64,000 nt of DNA from Guillardia theta CCMP2712 (lineage: Eukaryota > Protista > Cryptophyta). The translations under genes were made by a program, and so were the position numbers. Of this stretch, positions 4,041 through 9,323 are shown piece by piece. The stretch is taken from the NCBI RefSeq assembly GCF_000315625.1, contig NW_005434664.1, positions 124,001 to 188,000 of the forward strand. The letters run 5' to 3'. The notes beneath the pieces were generated by a model that was given only the letters and a program-made list of their open reading frames with translations, was not told the DNA's origin and searched no databases. How positions within the stretch are numbered: position 1 is the stretch's first letter; each line of letters starts with the position of its first letter.

Positions 4041-4863
4041 GGGAGCCTGAATGGGCACGAGTAAGAAGACCCCTCACGAGAGAACGCGCAGCATGCGATC
4101 GTCTGAGACTCTCTGCTAAGTGAGTATTGAGAGTGAATCATCTCGTTGCTTCCTGCACTCTCAGCTGACCCCATCCTTCCCTCCTACTTTCAGCCTTGTC
4201 ATCCCCTACACCTTCTTCGGTTCGCCAAAACTTGTCTCCTCGAATCCTCGCATTGGCCTTCTCCTGCTCCGTTCCCTTCCCTCTGCATCTTCTCTCCTCT
4301 CCTCATCTCTCTCCTCGCATCTCCTCTCCTCTCCTCATCTTTCCCTACCTCTCTTCTCTGTCCCTGTGATCGTTCGGTTCACCCCGATGCCGTAAGGGGC
4401 GCAACGAGCCAGGGGCAGCTCGACAGCACTAGTGAATTTTCCTATGATACAATTGCTGTCTTCTCAAATTCGTCTTGCGGCTCCTTGCGAAAATGGAGGA
4501 ACAAAGAAGTGGGAAGAAAGTACAGCGAGAGGGGGAGAAAGAGAGCGGGAGAGGACAGAGGAGACGGGGAGAAGGGAAGGAGAGAAAGAAGAGGAGGATT
4601 GTGACATGACAATATCATGAGGGGAATGCTATTACAACACAAGGTGTTGATACAGTAATATAGTTTAATGATAGACGTAGGTAGAAGAAAATTTAGATGG
4701 CCCGCCCTTGGATTGTTGCATACTGTGCTGTTTCTACAACCGTTTGACCTGTCACTGCAGGTATGGGAAGACTACAGTGATGAAACGAATACGATCGATC
4801 TTAAGCACATTCGTTGAGGCATGAAGGGCTAACGTATCTTTGTCCAACAACTTTGCCTTCTTC

Positions 4864-7800
4864 ATGCCGCAGCGTCTGGACAGCATGCGGTCGCTCGTGC
4901 ATGCAGGAAGGTTGCTGTCCTCTTGCATCACCAGCAGAGCCAAGCACCAAGCGTGCAATGCTCCTTCCAGGCGGAGCTTCTCCGTGATTTTTCCTGACCG
5001 TCATCATGTGAACGTCTTCGGACGGAAAATGTCTCAACTGAGCGAAGCTGAACTGACAATGCCCGGGGTGAGCACGACGGAATGGTTGGACAATAGGACG
5101 AAATCAGCCAAGGGGATCGGAAAGTTTGAGGACAAGCACTGGCCGATGCTACAGAAGCTTGCTTCCTCTGGTCCGGGCAACGCCAACACCTTCAAGAAAG
5201 TCAGGTACACCTTGCGGCAGATCGATCGCATCCTGGACGTGTTCGAGCCCGGTCAGCTCGCACTCTCCTTCAATGGCGGGAAGGACTCGACAGTGCTGAT
5301 GCACCTGATCAAAGAAGCGTGCGACCTTCACCCCACCCACAGCTTCACCCACATCCAACCCATCTGGTTTCAGAACCCTGACAATGAGTTCCCTGAGATG
5401 CAGCAGTACGTCCGACAAGTTGCCGACGAGCACTTCACGTACGATGAGGGTCTCAAGACGGTCGCAGACGAGAAGCTCAACAGGCTATGGACTATGCACA
5501 TCACCAACCCCAGAGACTTCATCGACGCGCTCGTCTACCTCTCGTCCTCCACCGGCCTGCGGTGCATCATCATGGGCAGCAGGCGGACGGACCCTGGCTG
5601 CAGGGACCTGTCGGGCATCCAGCTGATGGACCTCGCTCCTATCTTTCTCAGCTCGACCCTCACCCGCCTGAAGCTGGAGACAAGGTTGAATATGCTCAAA
5701 CTTGAAGGTGACCCCGGAATCCCCGGCACCTGGAGCTCGACGATCAAGGAGCCTTCACTGATGCGGTTCAGCCCCATCCTTGAGTGGTCCTACCGAGATA
5801 TCTGGGACTTCATCCAGGCGTTGGAGGTGAGTCCAGCTCCCTTGTTATCTCTTGGGTACTTCTGAATGTGGAATGTGTTTGCAGCTCCCGTACTGCAGCT
5901 TGTACGATGAAGGTTACACCTCCATCGGGTCCGTCATTGACACGGTCAGAAATCCTGCGCTCCTCCGACAGAACATGGAGCCGCTGCTGACCAAGGTGGA
6001 CGAGTACTTCGACCCGACAACCTCCCTCGGGAAGAGGTACGCGGAGATGGAGGAGCTCAAGATCCGCAACTACAAGCAGCTGGGGGCAGACATCTACGGC
6101 GAGAAGTACGAGAAGAAAATCGACGCCTCCAGACTCGACAAGTACTTTCCAGCTTGGAGCCTCATGGACGAGAGCAAGGAGAACGGCTCTAGGATCAAGG
6201 CTCTCACCCAGAGCGCGATTGGGCCCGACGGCCAGCGGTCCAACACAGCAGGAGACACAGCAGCGGTGCTGATCATCGGAGATGAGATTGTGTCCGGTCT
6301 GATCGAAGAGGACTACTCTCACATCCTTGGAGGAGCCCTGCAGAACGTGGGCATTGCGCTGAAGCAGGTGATGAAGATCGAGAATGACGTCGACGTCATC
6401 GCGTTCATGGTAAGGAGGATGAGTCCAGTACACAAGTACCTCTTCATCGCCGGAGGAACCGGCGCTGGGCATGAGGATGTCACGCTGACGGCTGTGGCGA
6501 AAGCGTTCGGGACGGGGATGCAGCGGCACCCGAAGCTGCTGGAGCTGATCATCAAGTGCATCCCCGAGGAGAAGATCACTGACCTTCACCTCAAGCTCGC
6601 AGACTTTCCGTTCGGCTCGGAGATTGTCGGCGAGATCCCCTCGGTGAGAGATGGGAAGGAGAGGTGGGGGATGGGAGGAAAGCGGAGATGAGGAGGGGAG
6701 GAAGGGGTTGGAGGGATTGCAAATGAAAGCACGAGGGATGGAAGATTGGCAGGTGGTAGGAGTGGTAGGGGAGGTAACGCATGTACAGGTCGAGCAAAGT
6801 GAGCAGGGGGACTGGAACAAAGTTTTGAAGAGATGGCCTATCATCAAGAAGAACAACTGCTTCATCATGTCTCACCGCCCTGGCATGCTGCCCACCATGA
6901 TGCGGTCGCTGCTCCCTAAGATCAAGAGCTCCCCCTTCCACGTCACCAAGATCACCATCGAGATGGAAGAGAACCATCTCGTCTGCGAGATCGCTGACTG
7001 GGACGCGATGTTCGACAAAGTACACGTTGTGTCCTTCTCGCACGAGGGAGCGGGAGAGGACGGGGCCGATCACGTTATCATCCGTGTGGAGAGCAAGAAC
7101 AGGAATCTGCAGCAGCAGGTGGTGCGAGCCATCCTGGAGAAGGTGGATGTGGATAAGGTGGTTTCTATCGACGATCAGCACACCTTCGATGCCGCACATG
7201 CCGAAGACAACGAGGCGCAGAAGGTCTACGAGAGGAAGTTCGGTGAAAACAGCTCAGAACTCTTCTCTCCCCCTCCTCTTACCGATCTTCAGGTCCCTCC
7301 CTCACCGTCCTCAGGGAGCAGTTCGACTCCATGGACACCGACGGGTCGGGGACGCTCGACAAAGAGGAAATCGGTCAGGCGCTCAAGAGCATGGGCTTCA
7401 ATTTCTCTCCGGGAGATCTTGATGCTGCTTACAAGGCGGTGCGACTTGCGTTCCCGCTCCTGCTCCCGCTCCCGCTCCCGCTCCCGCTCCCGCTCCTGCT
7501 CCCGCTCCCGCTCCCGCTCCCGCTCCCGCTCCCGCTCCCGCTCCCGCTCCCGCTCCCGCTCCCGCTCCCGCTCCCGCTCCCGCTCCCGCTCCCGCTCCCG
7601 CTCCCGCTCCCGCTCCCGCTCCCGCTCCCGCTCCCGCTCCCGCTCCCGCTCCCGCTCCCGCTCCCGCTCCCGCTCCCGCTCCCGCTCCCGCTCCCGCTCC
7701 CGCTCCCGCTCCCGCTCCCGCTCCCGCTCCCGCTCCCGCTCCCGCTCCCGCTCCATTTTCAGCACTTCTTCCGTCTCCATCTCCATCTCATACTCCTGCT

Positions 7801-8309
7801 CCATCTGCTGCTCCCTCCTCTTGTCTTCACCCATTATTCCTTCAGTCCCTGCTCCTCCCTCCTCCTTGTGTCTCACGACCTCGTCCAGGTTGACAGCAAC
7901 AGCGACGGCGAGATCGACTTTGGGGACTTCGAGAGGTCGGTGAGGCGAGCTTACAAGGCCTCCTACCGGCTATCGGACAAGGAGCTGGCGCAGCATTTCC
8001 ACCTCAAGGACCAGGACAACGACGAGCTGGTGGACTGCGAGGAGTTTCGGCAGCTCCTGAAGGAGCTGGGCTATGACAACTTCAGCCCGGTCCAGGTTGA
8101 CAGAATCTTCCAGCAGGTCAGCTGGGAGTGTGCTGGGTGGGATGGGAGGAGGGGAGGAGCGGGGGTTGAGCAGCTAATGAGTGACTTCAACTTGGCAGGT
8201 GGATGTGGGGAACAAGGGCAAGATCAACTGCAAGGAATTCAGCAAAGCTCTTCGCCTGCTCACAGCCAGTTTGGAGTGGCTCAAGGGAGGAGGCGGAAAC
8301 GCTGAGTGA
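4864..8309 (+). CDS. FLAD1: FAD synthase (PAPS-reductase fold) + MoCF-biosynthesis/CinA-like domain + C-terminal 4-EF-hand calmodulin-like domain; basic Ser/Arg-rich N-terminus resembling a mitochondrial presequence
   Basis: FADS motifs LSFNGGKDS, GSRRTDP, PILEWSYRDIW, LPYCSLYDEGYTSIG; MPT-binding motifs IIGDEIVSG, GGTGAGHEDVT; EF loops DTDGSGTLDKEE, DSNSDGEIDFGDF, DQDNDELVDCEEF, DVGNKGKINCKEF. Exons join through introns at about 5827-5884, 6644-6789, 7243-7292, 7439-7888 and 8117-8198. Confidence 0.85.
7452..7754. repeat. (CTCCCG)n hexanucleotide microsatellite, about 50 copies, intronic
   Basis: Directly visible; lies in the intron between EF-hand 1 and EF-hand 2. Confidence 0.97.
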
Positions 8310-8447
8310 GGTCCGTTACCTCCCCTGCTGCTTCACCTGCCCTGCGCGAGGCTGCTGCCGGTCTGGTAGGAAGAAAGGACGTGGACCTTCACTGAAATAA
8401 AGCTTGATTACATGAGATTCTACTTACAGACCCGAAACACATCAACG

Positions 8448-9323
8448 TCACTCCACCAGCCCCGTACTGCCTGGTCGAGTTTGGAAGAACGTTATAACAT
8501 CTCCTGCATCGTACAAATAAATCTCCCCTCCCAGAAGCTCGTAGATCGGACCCTCCTCCCCGCACAGATCCCCGAAGCACGCTAGCGCCGCAGGGTCTCC
8601 TGTGAAGATCCCCAAGCGGGCTGACAGGAGTTGGGCATCGGCTCCGAAGCGACCTGCCAGCTTCTCTGCGAGCGAATGCTGGGGCAGCTCCTGCTGCTGC
8701 TGCTGCTGCTCATACTCCTGCATCAGATCCGAGGCGTTGATCCGCAAGGGCCCTGCTCCTCCTACTAGTTTCCCTTGCAGGCCCTTCTTTGCCGCACTCG
8801 CATCCTCGTACCTCGAAAAATTGACAAACGCGCTGGAGGATTCGGGCAGGATGTTGACGGATGGGACCCCGTGGATCTGCGGATTACAAAGCTCCCCGAA
8901 CTTCTCGAACGCGTTCCGAAACTCTTCTTCCTGCACCAGAGTCGCATGTACGTTGCCAACCCACAGCCCAAAAAACGGAGGTCGCTCCCGCTGCCCCTTC
9001 TCTGCAGTCAGGATCACTTGCTTCTGTGGCGGCTCATCCTGCTGCCTCTTGTGCCATGATATTGATAATCCCGGCCGAGTGATCTTGCCTATCAGGGCTC
9101 CTTGCAGCCCTCTCAGAGCAGCGCAAGCGTGATCGTAACTTGCAAAATTCACAATGGCAGCCTTGTTTTCTACCAGGAGCTCAACAGCACGGGCTCCATG
9201 CTCTCTTGGTTTGCACATGTCTCCATACCTTGCAAACGCTTCCCACAGATCCTTTGCATCCACTCTCTCGGGGTCAACGTTTCCCACCCAGAGAGCAAAG
9301 GGAGGCTTTCGACCAAGGCTCAT
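8448..9323 (-). CDS. Two-RRM RNA-binding protein
   Basis: Two RNP2 (LWVGNV) and RNP1-like (AAIVNF, SAFVNF) motifs, then poly-Q and an unknown C-terminal segment. Confidence 0.85.
   Translation of the reverse strand: MSLGRKPPFALWVGNVDPERVDAKDLWEAFARYGDMCKPREHGARAVELLVENKAAIVNFASYDHACAALRGLQGALIGKITRPGLSISWHKRQQDEPPQKQVILTAEKGQRERPPFFGLWVGNVHATLVQEEEFRNAFEKFGELCNPQIHGVPSVNILPESSSAFVNFSRYEDASAAKKGLQGKLVGGAGPLRINASDLMQEYEQQQQQQELPQHSLAEKLAGRFGADAQLLSARLGIFTGDPAALACFGDLCGEEGPIYELLGGEIYLYDAGDVITFFQTRPGSTGLVE

What the first reader, a model, noticed from the sequence alone, without database searches (positions are those of the whole stretch)
4864..8309. FAD synthase carrying its own calmodulin-like 4-EF-hand module
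Seen: FADS, then MPT-binding/CinA-like domain, then four EF-hand loops, all joined in frame through canonical introns. The N-terminus resembles a mitochondrial presequence. Known: eukaryotic FADS has an MPT-binding domain (N-terminal in animals, with FAD hydrolase activity; C-terminal in plants); I know of no EF-hand fusion. Inference: Ca2+-gated flavin cofactor synthesis or hydrolysis. Some motifs diverge (ENGSR for ERxGR; GAGHEDVT for GPTHDDVT), so one activity may be altered.
Basis: partly seen in the sequence, partly recalled or inferred. Interest (0 to 1): 0.72.

Follow-up and report, generated by a model that had tools for sequence, protein, structure and literature searches.

The report
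Calcium-sensor-tailed FAD synthase, cryptophyte alga
The alga Guillardia theta really makes one mRNA and one 886-residue protein that joins the enzyme for the vitamin-B2 cofactor FAD to a calmodulin-like calcium sensor. Its sister Hanusia phi keeps the same fusion under selection, no other relative found has it, and no paper found describes it.

Summary
It is a six-exon gene (4864-8309, + strand) with five GT..AG introns.

RNA contigs from two studies carry the first three introns removed. They then run straight from exon 4 into exon 5. A DNA run shows no such joints.

The six exon translations occur, in order and exactly, in UniProt A0A7S4PB57_GUITH (886 aa, auto-named "FAD synthase", Guillardia theta). 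The NCBI genome model of this gene is a wrong 304-aa fragment without EF-hands.

The architecture is:
- a basic presequence-like N-terminus;
- a FAD1/FLAD1-type FMN adenylyltransferase domain, with PP-loop and RRTDP intact;
- an FPY1/CinA-like domain whose metal-binding Asp is Asn, as in land plants, so FAD hydrolysis is probably lost;
- a FLAD1_M-like domain;
- an invariant junction helix;
- a calmodulin-like tail of four EF-hands. EF1 is canonical, EF2 and EF3 are near-canonical, and EF4 is degenerate.

Hanusia phi has the same fusion at 94% identity. dN/dS of the tail is 0.07 at dS 0.5. Seven other cryptophyte homologues, two G. theta paralogues and green-lineage FADS all lack the tail, which points to one recent gain.

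Calcium control of FAD synthesis is plausible but untested. I rate this a new variant of a known kind, of moderate interest. The scan had not noted it elsewhere.

The parts
4759..4863 (+). 5' leader of the mRNA. It holds three short out-of-frame uORFs, with ATGs at 4762, 4779 and 4821.
   Evidence: RNA contigs begin at 4759 (X9) and 4772 (X1). The uORFs were read from the sequence. There is an in-frame stop at 4822-4824, and 4864 is the first in-frame ATG.
4864..5826 (+). Exon 1, aa 1-321. It comprises a presequence-like N-terminus (aa 1-67, 4864-5064), the PP-loop SFNGGKDS (5266-5289), RRTDPG (5581-5598), and a cryptophyte-specific insert of about 49 aa (aa 248-296, 5605-5751).
   Evidence: PAPS_reduct over aa 131-319, E 1.6e-12. 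Human FAD synthase 8ROM/8RON is the best PDB match. Motif coordinates come and the alignment. The RNA contig is colinear over 4772-5826.
5827..5884 (+). Intron 1, 58 nt, GT..AG.
   Evidence: The joint is present in RNA contigs of X1 and X9 and absent from DNA run X15.
5885..6643 (+). Exon 2, aa 322-574. It comprises the end of the FADS domain (PYCSLYDEGYTSIGS), the diverged gamma-phosphate motif ENGSR (6179-6193), and the start of the FPY1/CinA-like MoCF domain from 6263. Asn488 stands in place of the catalytic Asp (ENDVD, 6380-6394). GGTGAGHEDVT lies at 6452-6484.
   Evidence: MoCF_biosynth E 1.5e-14. 8RON matches at E 1.6e-20. Alignment columns are, coordinates. The role of the Asp comes from PMC9678776.
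6644..6788 (+). Intron 2, 145 nt, GT..AG.
   Evidence: The joint is present in X1 and X9 contigs.
6789..7242 (+). Exon 3, aa 575-725 plus the first base of codon 726. It comprises the end of the MoCF domain (SHRPG in place of LPGVP, 6870-6884), a FLAD1_M-like domain (about aa 621-705, 6927-7181), and the start of the junction helix.
   Evidence: It aligns to the PF24102-bearing regions of P0012 and of green-lineage FADS. AF2 gives a beta-alpha-beta-beta-alpha-beta pattern over 625-705 with pLDDT about 80-90.
7243..7292 (+). Intron 3, 50 nt, GT..AG. This is the joint that fuses the enzyme to the EF-hand tail.
   Evidence: Joint 7242/7293 is present in the contigs of X1 and X9, from two studies, and absent from DNA run X15. 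If the intron is retained, the frame stays open with no stop until 7941-7943, so exon 3 has no terminator of its own.
7293..7438 (+). Exon 4, aa 726-774. It holds the junction helix and EF-hand 1, whose loop DTDGSGTLDKEE (7334-7369) is canonical.
   Evidence: EF-hand_6 E 1.7e-8. Loops are listed. The tail aligns to calmodulin.
7439..7888 (+). Intron 4, 450 nt, GT..AG. It holds a (TCCCGC)x50 microsatellite at 7452-7754.
   Evidence: TRF. The loose end at 7440 in X1 and X9 reads the start of exon 5.
7889..8116 (+). Exon 5, aa 775-850. EF-hand 2 has loop DSNSDGEIDFGD (7892-7927, Asp at position 12). EF-hand 3 has loop DQDNDELVDCEE (8009-8044, Glu at position 6).
   Evidence: EF-hand_1 and EF-hand_7 hits; loops; calmodulin alignment.
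8117..8198 (+). Intron 5, 82 nt, GT..AG.
   Evidence: E5 and E6 are contiguous in the transcript-derived protein P0151.
8199..8309 (+). Exon 6, aa 851-886 plus the TGA stop. EF-hand 4 has a degenerate loop, DVGNKGKINCKE (8202-8237).
   Evidence: Weak EF-hand hit, E 0.03. Helix-loop-helix in the AF2 model. It aligns to calmodulin EF4.
8310..8412 (+). 3' UTR, with AATAAA at 8396-8401. The end near 8412 is inferred.
   Evidence: The 2856-nt contig of X1 has 440 nt beyond 7440. That leaves about 103 nt after the stop.

Best explanation
This is one nuclear gene of Guillardia theta. It encodes an 886-residue, probably mitochondrion-targeted FAD synthase (FMN adenylyltransferase of the FAD1/FLAD1 type) in the plant-like domain order.

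Domain order:
1. Catalytic PAPS-reductase-like domain.
2. A catalytically dead FPY1/CinA-like "FAD pyrophosphatase" domain.
3. A FLAD1_M-like domain.
4. A strictly conserved junction helix.
5. A tethered calmodulin-like domain with two to three competent Ca2+ sites.

Shown here: the fusion is real at the RNA level. It is kept under purifying selection in Guillardia and Hanusia. It was gained once, recently, inside a cryptophyte-specific FADS clade.

Inferred: the tail works as the calmodulin-like domain of a CDPK does. Ca2+ binding to the EF-hands changes how the tail and junction sit on the enzyme body. That would tune FMN adenylylation, or the release or hand-over of FAD held by the dead pyrophosphatase domain. 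The supply of flavin cofactor in one compartment would then follow Ca2+ signals. FAD hydrolysis is probably not catalysed by this protein.

My odds: fusion real and functional, about 0.95. FADS domain active, about 0.75. Pyrophosphatase dead, about 0.75. Ca2+ acts as a regulator of the enzyme's output, about 0.45.
For: - Splicing: three joints plus the run-on into exon 5, in RNA contigs of two studies, and none in a DNA run.
- Product: all six exon translations are found exactly and in order in P0151 = UniRef A0A7S4PB57_GUITH, 886 aa.
- Domains: Pfam PAPS_reduct 4.2e-22, MoCF_biosynth 7.6e-14, EF-hand_7 5.8e-22 on P0151.
- PDB matches by sequence: human FAD synthase 8RON/8ROM for both enzyme domains, and calmodulin over all four EF-hands at E about 1e-16 to 4e-20.
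- PDB matches by fold: 8RON, T. thermophilus CinA, C. glabrata FMNAT, then calmodulin and troponin C.
- Catalytic motifs: PP-loop SFNGGKDS and RRTDP are kept, and D243 is invariant in 34 sequences.
- Pyrophosphatase: Asn488 stands at the metal-binding Asp. GPTxDD and LPGVP are lost. The meaning of the Asp comes from PMC9678776.
- Second species: the Hanusia phi orthologue P0191 (908 aa) is 94% identical and has the full tail.
- Selection: dN/dS is 0.068 for the tail (35 synonymous against 12 non-synonymous differences) and 0.012 for the enzyme. There are 0 amino-acid changes against 12 synonymous ones in the junction, aa 701-730.
- Distribution: the tail is absent from all other homologues whose C-terminus is known. 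The careful tree nests the EF pair in a clade with 99/96 support, and the tail's presence needs one change on the tree.
- N-terminus: net charge +6, Ser-rich, amphipathic, pLDDT about 30.
Against: - No biochemical datum exists for Ca2+ binding, for an effect on activity, or for localisation.
- EF4 is degenerate. EF2 has Asp at position 12 and EF3 has Glu at position 6.
- The gamma-phosphate motif ERxGR is ENGSR, a change shared by the whole cryptophyte clade, so even FADS activity is assumed rather than shown.
- The AF2 confidence for the tail is only 50-74.
- The raw-read RNA run laid no reads. Isoform ratios and intron-3 retention could therefore not be measured.
- G. theta has other EF-hand-fused enzymes according to unchecked earlier notes. 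A general tendency to add EF-hands lowers the specific meaning of this one.
Confidence: 0.5

Rival explanations
1. The tail binds Ca2+ but does not gate catalysis. It serves as a Ca2+-dependent docking or localisation module. For example, it could attach the synthase to a membrane, or to client apo-flavoproteins, so that FAD is delivered locally.
For: The tail is constrained (dN/dS 0.068) and calmodulin-like over its whole length, and calmodulin-type domains typically bind target helices. The dead pyrophosphatase domain could hold FAD for hand-over, as PMC9678776 proposes for AtFADS1.
Against: No partner is known. The junction to the enzyme is invariant, which fits action in cis better. Nothing tested here separates this reading from the best explanation.
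Confidence: 0.25
2. The tail is a structural appendage and not a Ca2+ switch. It would be permanently metal-loaded or metal-free and act in folding, oligomerisation or stability.
For: EF4 is degenerate and EF2 and EF3 are non-canonical. Many EF-hand pairs are structural. Purifying selection shows function but does not show sensing.
Against: EF1 is fully canonical. EF1 to EF3 keep acidic or amide ligands at positions 1, 3, 5 and 12 in both species despite dS of about 0.5.
Confidence: 0.15
3. The protein is not an active FAD synthase. With a diverged gamma-phosphate motif and a 49-residue insert in the catalytic domain, it would be a flavin- or nucleotide-binding regulator. The canonical paralogue on contig C126 would make the FAD.
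For: ENGSR stands in place of ERxGR, and the insert lies between the flavin motif and PSLMRF. G. theta has a canonical paralogue that keeps D-D, GPTHDD, LPGVP and ERESR.
Against: The PP-loop, RRTDP and PYCxLYDxGYTSxG are intact, and dN/dS is 0.01. The role of the gamma-phosphate motif is called unclear in PMC3546728. No RibF-type FADS was found in the genome, so several compartments probably depend on these paralogues.
Confidence: 0.1
4. The fusion is an artefact. On this reading, a FADS gene and a separate downstream EF-hand gene are joined only by rare read-through transcripts or by assembly.
For: The NCBI genome annotation gives only a 304-aa partial FADS model without EF-hands. The contigs used here cannot give isoform proportions.
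Against: The in-frame GT..AG joint 7242/7293 appears in contigs of two studies. It also appears in independent MMETSP transcript models of two species. Exon 3 has no stop of its own. Exon 4 has no plausible start, because its first Met lies immediately before the EF1 calcium loop. The junction is invariant between the species, and the tail is under purifying selection in frame.
Confidence: 0.03

Closest known systems
Plant and green-algal FADS1 (Arabidopsis AtFADS1 At5g03430; Chlamydomonas CrFADS1), PMC9678776
   Same: The domain order is the same: FAD1-type synthetase, then an FPY1/CinA-like domain, then FLAD1_M. As in land-plant AtFADS1, the metal-binding Asp of the pyrophosphatase is Asn followed by Asp (N-D).
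   Different: This protein adds about 160 residues of calmodulin-like EF-hands and a presequence-like N-terminus. AtFADS1 is cytosolic. It also carries two cryptophyte-specific inserts in the synthetase domain and has ENGSR for ERxGR. Identity is only about 26-30%.
Human FAD synthase FLAD1 (PDB 8RON, 8ROM)
   Same: It is the best solved relative of both enzyme domains, by sequence (E 1.6e-20 and 3.8e-14) and by fold. Isoform 1 also has a mitochondrial presequence.
   Different: The domain order is reversed, with the MPT-binding/FAD-hydrolase domain N-terminal. Human FADHy is active with Co2+/K+ (abstract of PMC6941110). There is no EF-hand.
Calcium-dependent protein kinases (CDPK): an enzyme, a junction, then a calmodulin-like domain. 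This comparison rests on general knowledge.
   Same: The layout is a catalytic body followed by a conserved junction helix and a tethered four-EF-hand calmodulin-like domain. The tail aligns to calmodulin end to end, and the junction is invariant between species.
   Different: The enzyme class is different. No autoinhibitory pseudosubstrate has been shown, and the regulatory logic is only an analogy.
The cryptophyte paralogues and orthologues without a tail: GUITHDRAFT_115085 (P0154), P0001, P0152, the Hemiselmis proteins P0005 and P0155, and the canonical C126/P0012 type
   Same: They belong to the same family. Clades A and B share the same inserts, the N/S-D substitution and ExGSR-type motifs.
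   Different: All end after the FLAD1_M-like domain. For P0001 the stop and a short 3' UTR are visible in three transcript contigs.

Membership tests
Eukaryotic FAD synthase / FMN adenylyltransferase (FAD1-FLAD1, PAPS-reductase-like fold) | PF01507 match above the curated cut-off, with FADS as the nearest solved relatives | tested here: met
   79.4 bits against a cut-off of 22.5. 8ROM and 8RON by sequence. 8RON, 3G5A and 2WSI by fold.
Eukaryotic FAD synthase / FMN adenylyltransferase (FAD1-FLAD1, PAPS-reductase-like fold) | PP-loop SxNGGKD (ATP binding) | tested here: met
   SFNGGKDS at aa 135-142. N137, G138, G139 and D141 are nearly invariant in alignment A1.
Eukaryotic FAD synthase / FMN adenylyltransferase (FAD1-FLAD1, PAPS-reductase-like fold) | Flavin-motif region R-x-x-D-P and PYCxLYDxGYTSxG | tested here: met
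   RRTDPG at aa 240-245 (D243 is the only invariant column) and PYCSLYDEGYTSIGS at aa 323-337. A 49-aa clade-specific insert follows RRTDPG.
Eukaryotic FAD synthase / FMN adenylyltransferase (FAD1-FLAD1, PAPS-reductase-like fold) | C-terminal gamma-phosphate motif ERxGR | tested here: not met
   ENGSR at aa 420-424. The first Arg is lost across cryptophyte clades A and B. The motif's role is described as unclear in PMC3546728.
Eukaryotic FAD synthase / FMN adenylyltransferase (FAD1-FLAD1, PAPS-reductase-like fold) | Catalyses FMN + ATP to FAD + PPi | not testable with these tools
   An enzyme assay or yeast fad1 complementation is needed.
FPY1/CinA-type FAD (ADP-ribose) pyrophosphatase domain (COG1058, PF00994) | MoCF_biosynth fold | tested here: met
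   PF00994 at 52-54 bits against a cut-off of 26.6. CinA 4CTA and 3KBQ by fold.
FPY1/CinA-type FAD (ADP-ribose) pyrophosphatase domain (COG1058, PF00994) | Metal-coordinating Asp (T. thermophilus CinA Asp45; Asn296 in the inactive AtFADS1) | tested here: not met
   The column holds Asn488 (KIENDVD). It is Asp in human FLAD1, Coccomyxa, Haematococcus, P0012 and the G. theta C126 paralogue. Its meaning comes from PMC9678776.
FPY1/CinA-type FAD (ADP-ribose) pyrophosphatase domain (COG1058, PF00994) | Conserved GGxGPTxDD and LPGVP motifs | tested here: not met
   GGTGAGHEDVT and SHRPG.
Calmodulin-like four-EF-hand domain | Four helix-loop-helix units alignable to calmodulin | tested here: met
   phmmer against calmodulin covers query 31-168 and calmodulin 10-145, E about 1e-16. 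Eight helices are modelled at 713-880. Foldseek hits to calmodulin and troponin C.
Calmodulin-like four-EF-hand domain | Canonical 12-residue loops (ligands at positions 1, 3, 5 and 12; Gly at 6) | tested here: inconclusive
   EF1 is canonical. EF2 has Asp at position 12. EF3 has Glu at position 6. EF4 has Gly at 3 and Lys at 5 and is degenerate. The pattern is the same in Hanusia phi.
Calmodulin-like four-EF-hand domain | Binds Ca2+ with a conformational change | not testable with these tools
   ITC, 45Ca overlay or a mobility shift is needed.
CDPK-type autoregulated enzyme (by analogy only) | A junction segment that the tethered calmodulin-like domain binds in a Ca2+-dependent way | tested here: inconclusive
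   The junction aa 701-730 is invariant between the two species, with 12 synonymous and 0 non-synonymous differences. The complex prediction gave no verdict.

The most novel reading that the evidence does not exclude
This would be a calcium-switched FAD synthase. The tethered calmodulin-like domain and its invariant junction would gate FMN adenylylation. Alternatively they would gate the release of FAD parked on the dead pyrophosphatase domain, inside the mitochondrion. Either way, supply of a redox cofactor would follow a second messenger directly. I found no described case of Ca2+-sensor control built into a flavin-cofactor biosynthetic enzyme.
Probability: 0.3. Interest if true: 0.7.

Novelty: new variant of a known kind. 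Interest (0 to 1): 0.42.

Why it matters
How cells match FAD supply to demand in each compartment is poorly understood. The role of the pyrophosphatase-like domain fused to FADS in animals and plants is also still debated (PMC9678776).

Here evolution has bolted a calcium sensor onto that enzyme and kept it under selection. That offers a direct experimental handle: one recombinant protein, assayed with and without Ca2+ and with and without the tail.

It also shows that the public genome annotation of G. theta misses the fusion. And it shows that cryptophytes run a three-paralogue FAD1-type system with no RibF-type enzyme detected.

The reach is limited. The fusion is confined to two sister genera, and G. 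theta seems generally prone to EF-hand fusions.

Tried and rejected
- **Complex prediction** of the enzyme body (aa 68-725) with the EF tail (aa 727-886) plus Ca2+: no verdict, score 0.00. This is evidence neither for nor against binding.
- **Raw-read RNA run X22**: no reads were laid, so it is no test.
- **The cryptophyte insert (aa 248-296) as a calmodulin-target helix**: its hydrophobic moment is 0.28, near the protein median of 0.24, and its net charge is -1. AF2 confidence there is low. I dropped the idea.
- **A recent EF-hand donor gene in the genome**: the best other EF-hand loci are only 28-30% identical, so the origin of the tail is unresolved.
- **Bacterial-type FADS (PF06574) in the genome**: none found. 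An exon-by-exon search can miss genes.
- **Species behind SRR15274648** (the tail-less closest relative P0001): no paper was found.
- **Literature searches** for FAD synthase or FAD synthetase with EF-hand, and for Guillardia theta with FAD synthetase: nothing relevant.
- **P0005 contig look-up**: not on record.
- All searches used single exons by reference, or the database protein P0151 that a tool returned.
Full report
**What is in the sequence**

| Exon | Coordinates | Note |
|---|---|---|
| E1 | 4864-5826 | |
| E2 | 5885-6643 | |
| E3 | 6789-7242 | ends in phase 1 |
| E4 | 7293-7438 | |
| E5 | 7889-8116 | |
| E6 | 8199-8309 | stop at 8307-8309 |

The introns are 58, 145, 50, 450 and 82 nt long. 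Intron 4 holds a 50-copy TCCCGC microsatellite.

Pfam, run exon by exon, finds PAPS_reduct in E1 (1.6e-12) with its last 20 positions at the start of E2. It finds MoCF_biosynth in E2 (1.5e-14) and EF-hand models in E4, E5 and, weakly, E6.

**Is it one transcript?**

I laid window:4500-7451 on four runs, which stops short of the microsatellite.
- One 2856-nt contig of run X1 covers 4772-7440 with introns 1 to 3 removed. It then continues for 440 nt, beginning with the letters of exon 5.
- A contig of run X9, from another study and under another organism label, shows the 6643/6789 and 7242/7293 joints and the same run-on. A second X9 contig shows the 5826/5885 joint.
- DNA run X15 is colinear with the genome and shows no joints.
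- The raw-read RNA run X22 laid nothing and is no test.

So the junction that matters, exon 3 to exon 4, exists in RNA. In addition, exon 3 has no stop of its own. With intron 3 retained, the frame stays open to 7941-7943. Exon 4 offers no sensible start codon either.

**Identity**

A search with exon 1 against the 1.84-billion-protein library gave a close relative, P0001. A word search with P0001 then returned P0151. This is UniRef A0A7S4PB57_GUITH, "FAD synthase", Guillardia theta, 886 aa, from an MMETSP transcript. All six exon translations occur in P0151 exactly and in order, with Gly726 from the split codon.

The genome's own NCBI model of this locus is XP_005838704.1 (GUITHDRAFT_42232, "partial", 304 aa). 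It skips coding stretches, including RRTDP, and it lacks the tail.

The window is therefore G. theta CCMP2712 nuclear DNA, as earlier notes of this scan said.

**Domains and motifs**

*Enzyme domains.* Human FAD synthase (8RON, 8ROM) is the best solved relative of both enzyme domains by sequence. The same holds by fold of an AlphaFold2 model with mean pLDDT 70.9, whose enzyme domains are mostly at 80-95. CinA, C. glabrata FMNAT and yeast Fad1 follow. The domain order is the plant one, with the synthetase first (PMC9678776).

*Synthetase domain.*
- The PP-loop (SFNGGKDS), RRTDPG and PYCSLYDEGYTSIGS are intact. D243 is the only invariant column of a 34-sequence alignment.
- The gamma-phosphate motif is ENGSR instead of ERxGR.
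- Two inserts are present. The larger spans aa 248-296, and AF2 predicts it with low confidence.
- All of these deviations are shared by the cryptophyte clade.

*Pyrophosphatase-like domain.* The metal-coordinating Asp (CinA Asp45) is Asn488, followed by Asp. This is the same N-D pair as in land-plant AtFADS1. That protein has no pyrophosphatase activity, and an Agrobacterium D-to-N mutant is dead (PMC9678776). GGxGPTxDD has become GGTGAGHED, and LPGVP has become SHRPG. I therefore expect no FAD hydrolysis.

*FLAD1_M-like domain.* Residues 621-705 align with the FLAD1_M domain (PF24102) of relatives and fold confidently.

*EF-hand tail.* The tail (aa 727-886) aligns to calmodulin across all four EF-hands. 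The loops are:

| EF-hand | Loop | Status |
|---|---|---|
| EF1 | DTDGSGTLDKEE | canonical |
| EF2 | DSNSDGEIDFGD | Asp at position 12 |
| EF3 | DQDNDELVDCEE | Glu at position 6 |
| EF4 | DVGNKGKINCKE | degenerate |

*N-terminus.* The first 44 residues have net charge +6, one acidic residue and eight Ser, with an amphipathic stretch. They are modelled as disordered. They look like a mitochondrial presequence and not like a cryptophyte signal peptide. That is an inference; no targeting predictor was available.

**Family context**

The G. theta genome holds three paralogues of this type:
- this gene, on contig C10;
- GUITHDRAFT_115085 on C81 (P0154, 741 aa, 56% identical, PP-loop altered to SFNGSQDC);
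- a canonical one on C126, which keeps D-D, GPTHDD, LPGVP and ERESR.

There is also a distant hit on C75. No RibF-type FADS was detected.

A maximum-likelihood tree of 25 sequences gives three cryptophyte clades. The EF-bearing pair sits inside clade A, with support 99/96. Clade A also holds P0001 and P0152/P0196, which end without a tail. For P0001, three transcript contigs show the stop and a short 3' UTR. Counted over the rows with a known C-terminus, the tail needs one change on the tree. The tail-less outgroups make that change a gain.

**Conservation**

Cluster members of P0151 include P0191, a 908-aa MMETSP model marked complete. P0191 matches the EukProt Hanusia phi fragments across the stretches they share. 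It is 94% identical to P0151 over 884 residues and carries the whole tail.

I aligned codons exon by exon to its cDNA, L004:

| Region | dS | dN/dS | Note |
|---|---|---|---|
| Enzyme body | 0.93 | 0.012 | |
| EF tail | 0.50 | 0.068 | 35 synonymous, 12 non-synonymous differences |
| Junction, aa 701-730 | | | 12 synonymous, 0 non-synonymous differences |
| N-terminus | | 0.26 | evolves fast, as targeting peptides do |

The tail is thus translated and constrained in two species.

**How it probably works**

The shown facts are a real, selected fusion of a probably active FMN adenylyltransferase, a probably dead FAD pyrophosphatase domain, and a calmodulin-like module with two to three plausible Ca2+ sites behind an invariant junction.

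My best reading is a CDPK-like arrangement. Ca2+ binding to the tail would change its contact with the junction and enzyme body. That would modulate FAD synthesis or FAD release in the compartment the protein is sent to, probably the mitochondrion.

The rivals are:
- a Ca2+-dependent docking module;
- a purely structural tail;
- a non-catalytic flavin binder;
- a chimeric-transcript artefact, now very unlikely.

A complex prediction of body against tail gave no verdict. It is listed only among the things tried.

**Novelty**

No paper in the searchable library joins FAD synthase or synthetase with EF-hands, or treats FADS in G. theta. The protein does sit in UniProt under an automatic name, so the fusion is unstudied rather than undiscovered.

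Earlier notes of this scan report other EF-hand-fused enzymes in this genome, such as a plastid terminal oxidase. I did not check them. They suggest a lineage habit. The scan had not noted this fusion on other DNA.

I file it as a new variant of a known kind, of moderate interest.

- The stretch sent to read laying had 2952 letters.

Noticed in passing
window 7452-7754: A perfect-looking (TCCCGC)x50 microsatellite (98% matches) fills most of intron 4. It creates long spurious ORFs in three frames, with RS, PL and AP repeats on the + strand and an ER repeat on the - strand.
   Followed up: partly
window 4864-6500 (NCBI XP_005838704.1, GUITHDRAFT_42232): The public genome model of this gene is a 304-aa partial protein. 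It treats coding sequence, including the RRTDP motif and the clade-specific insert, as introns. It also omits exons 3 to 6. The RNA contigs contradict it.
   Followed up: yes
G000:C81:89701-90646 (L012) and G000:C126:45518-46222 (L013): There are two further FAD1-type paralogues in the genome. The C81 copy (GUITHDRAFT_115085) has an altered PP-loop, SFNGSQDC, and an acidic insert of about 80 aa. The C126 copy keeps all the pyrophosphatase motifs and looks like the canonical bifunctional enzyme. No RibF-type FADS was detected in the genome.
   Followed up: partly
window 4759-4863: Three short upstream ORFs (5, 14 and 3 codons) lie in the transcribed 5' leader. In-frame Met56 and Met66 lie just after the presequence-like part. 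Alternative initiation giving targeted and untargeted isoforms, as in human FLAD1, is conceivable.
   Followed up: no
window 8448-9323 (- strand): A convergent neighbour gene encodes an RRM-domain protein (RRM_1, E 2e-13). Its ORF ends only about 35 nt from the inferred poly(A) site of the FADS gene, so the 3' ends of the two genes nearly touch or overlap.
   Followed up: partly
P0125 (727 aa, library protein): An unrelated FADS fusion turned up among distant hits. It joins a PAPS_reduct (FADS-type) domain to a methylenetetrahydrofolate dehydrogenase/cyclohydrolase (THF_DHG_CYH and THF_DHG_CYH_C). Its organism is unknown.
   Followed up: no
window 5605-5751 (aa 248-296): An insert of about 49 residues lies between RRTDPG and PSLMRF in the catalytic domain. 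It is conserved in cryptophyte clades A and B and absent from the canonical clade C, plants and animals. AF2 predicts it with low confidence. Its function is unknown.
   Followed up: partly
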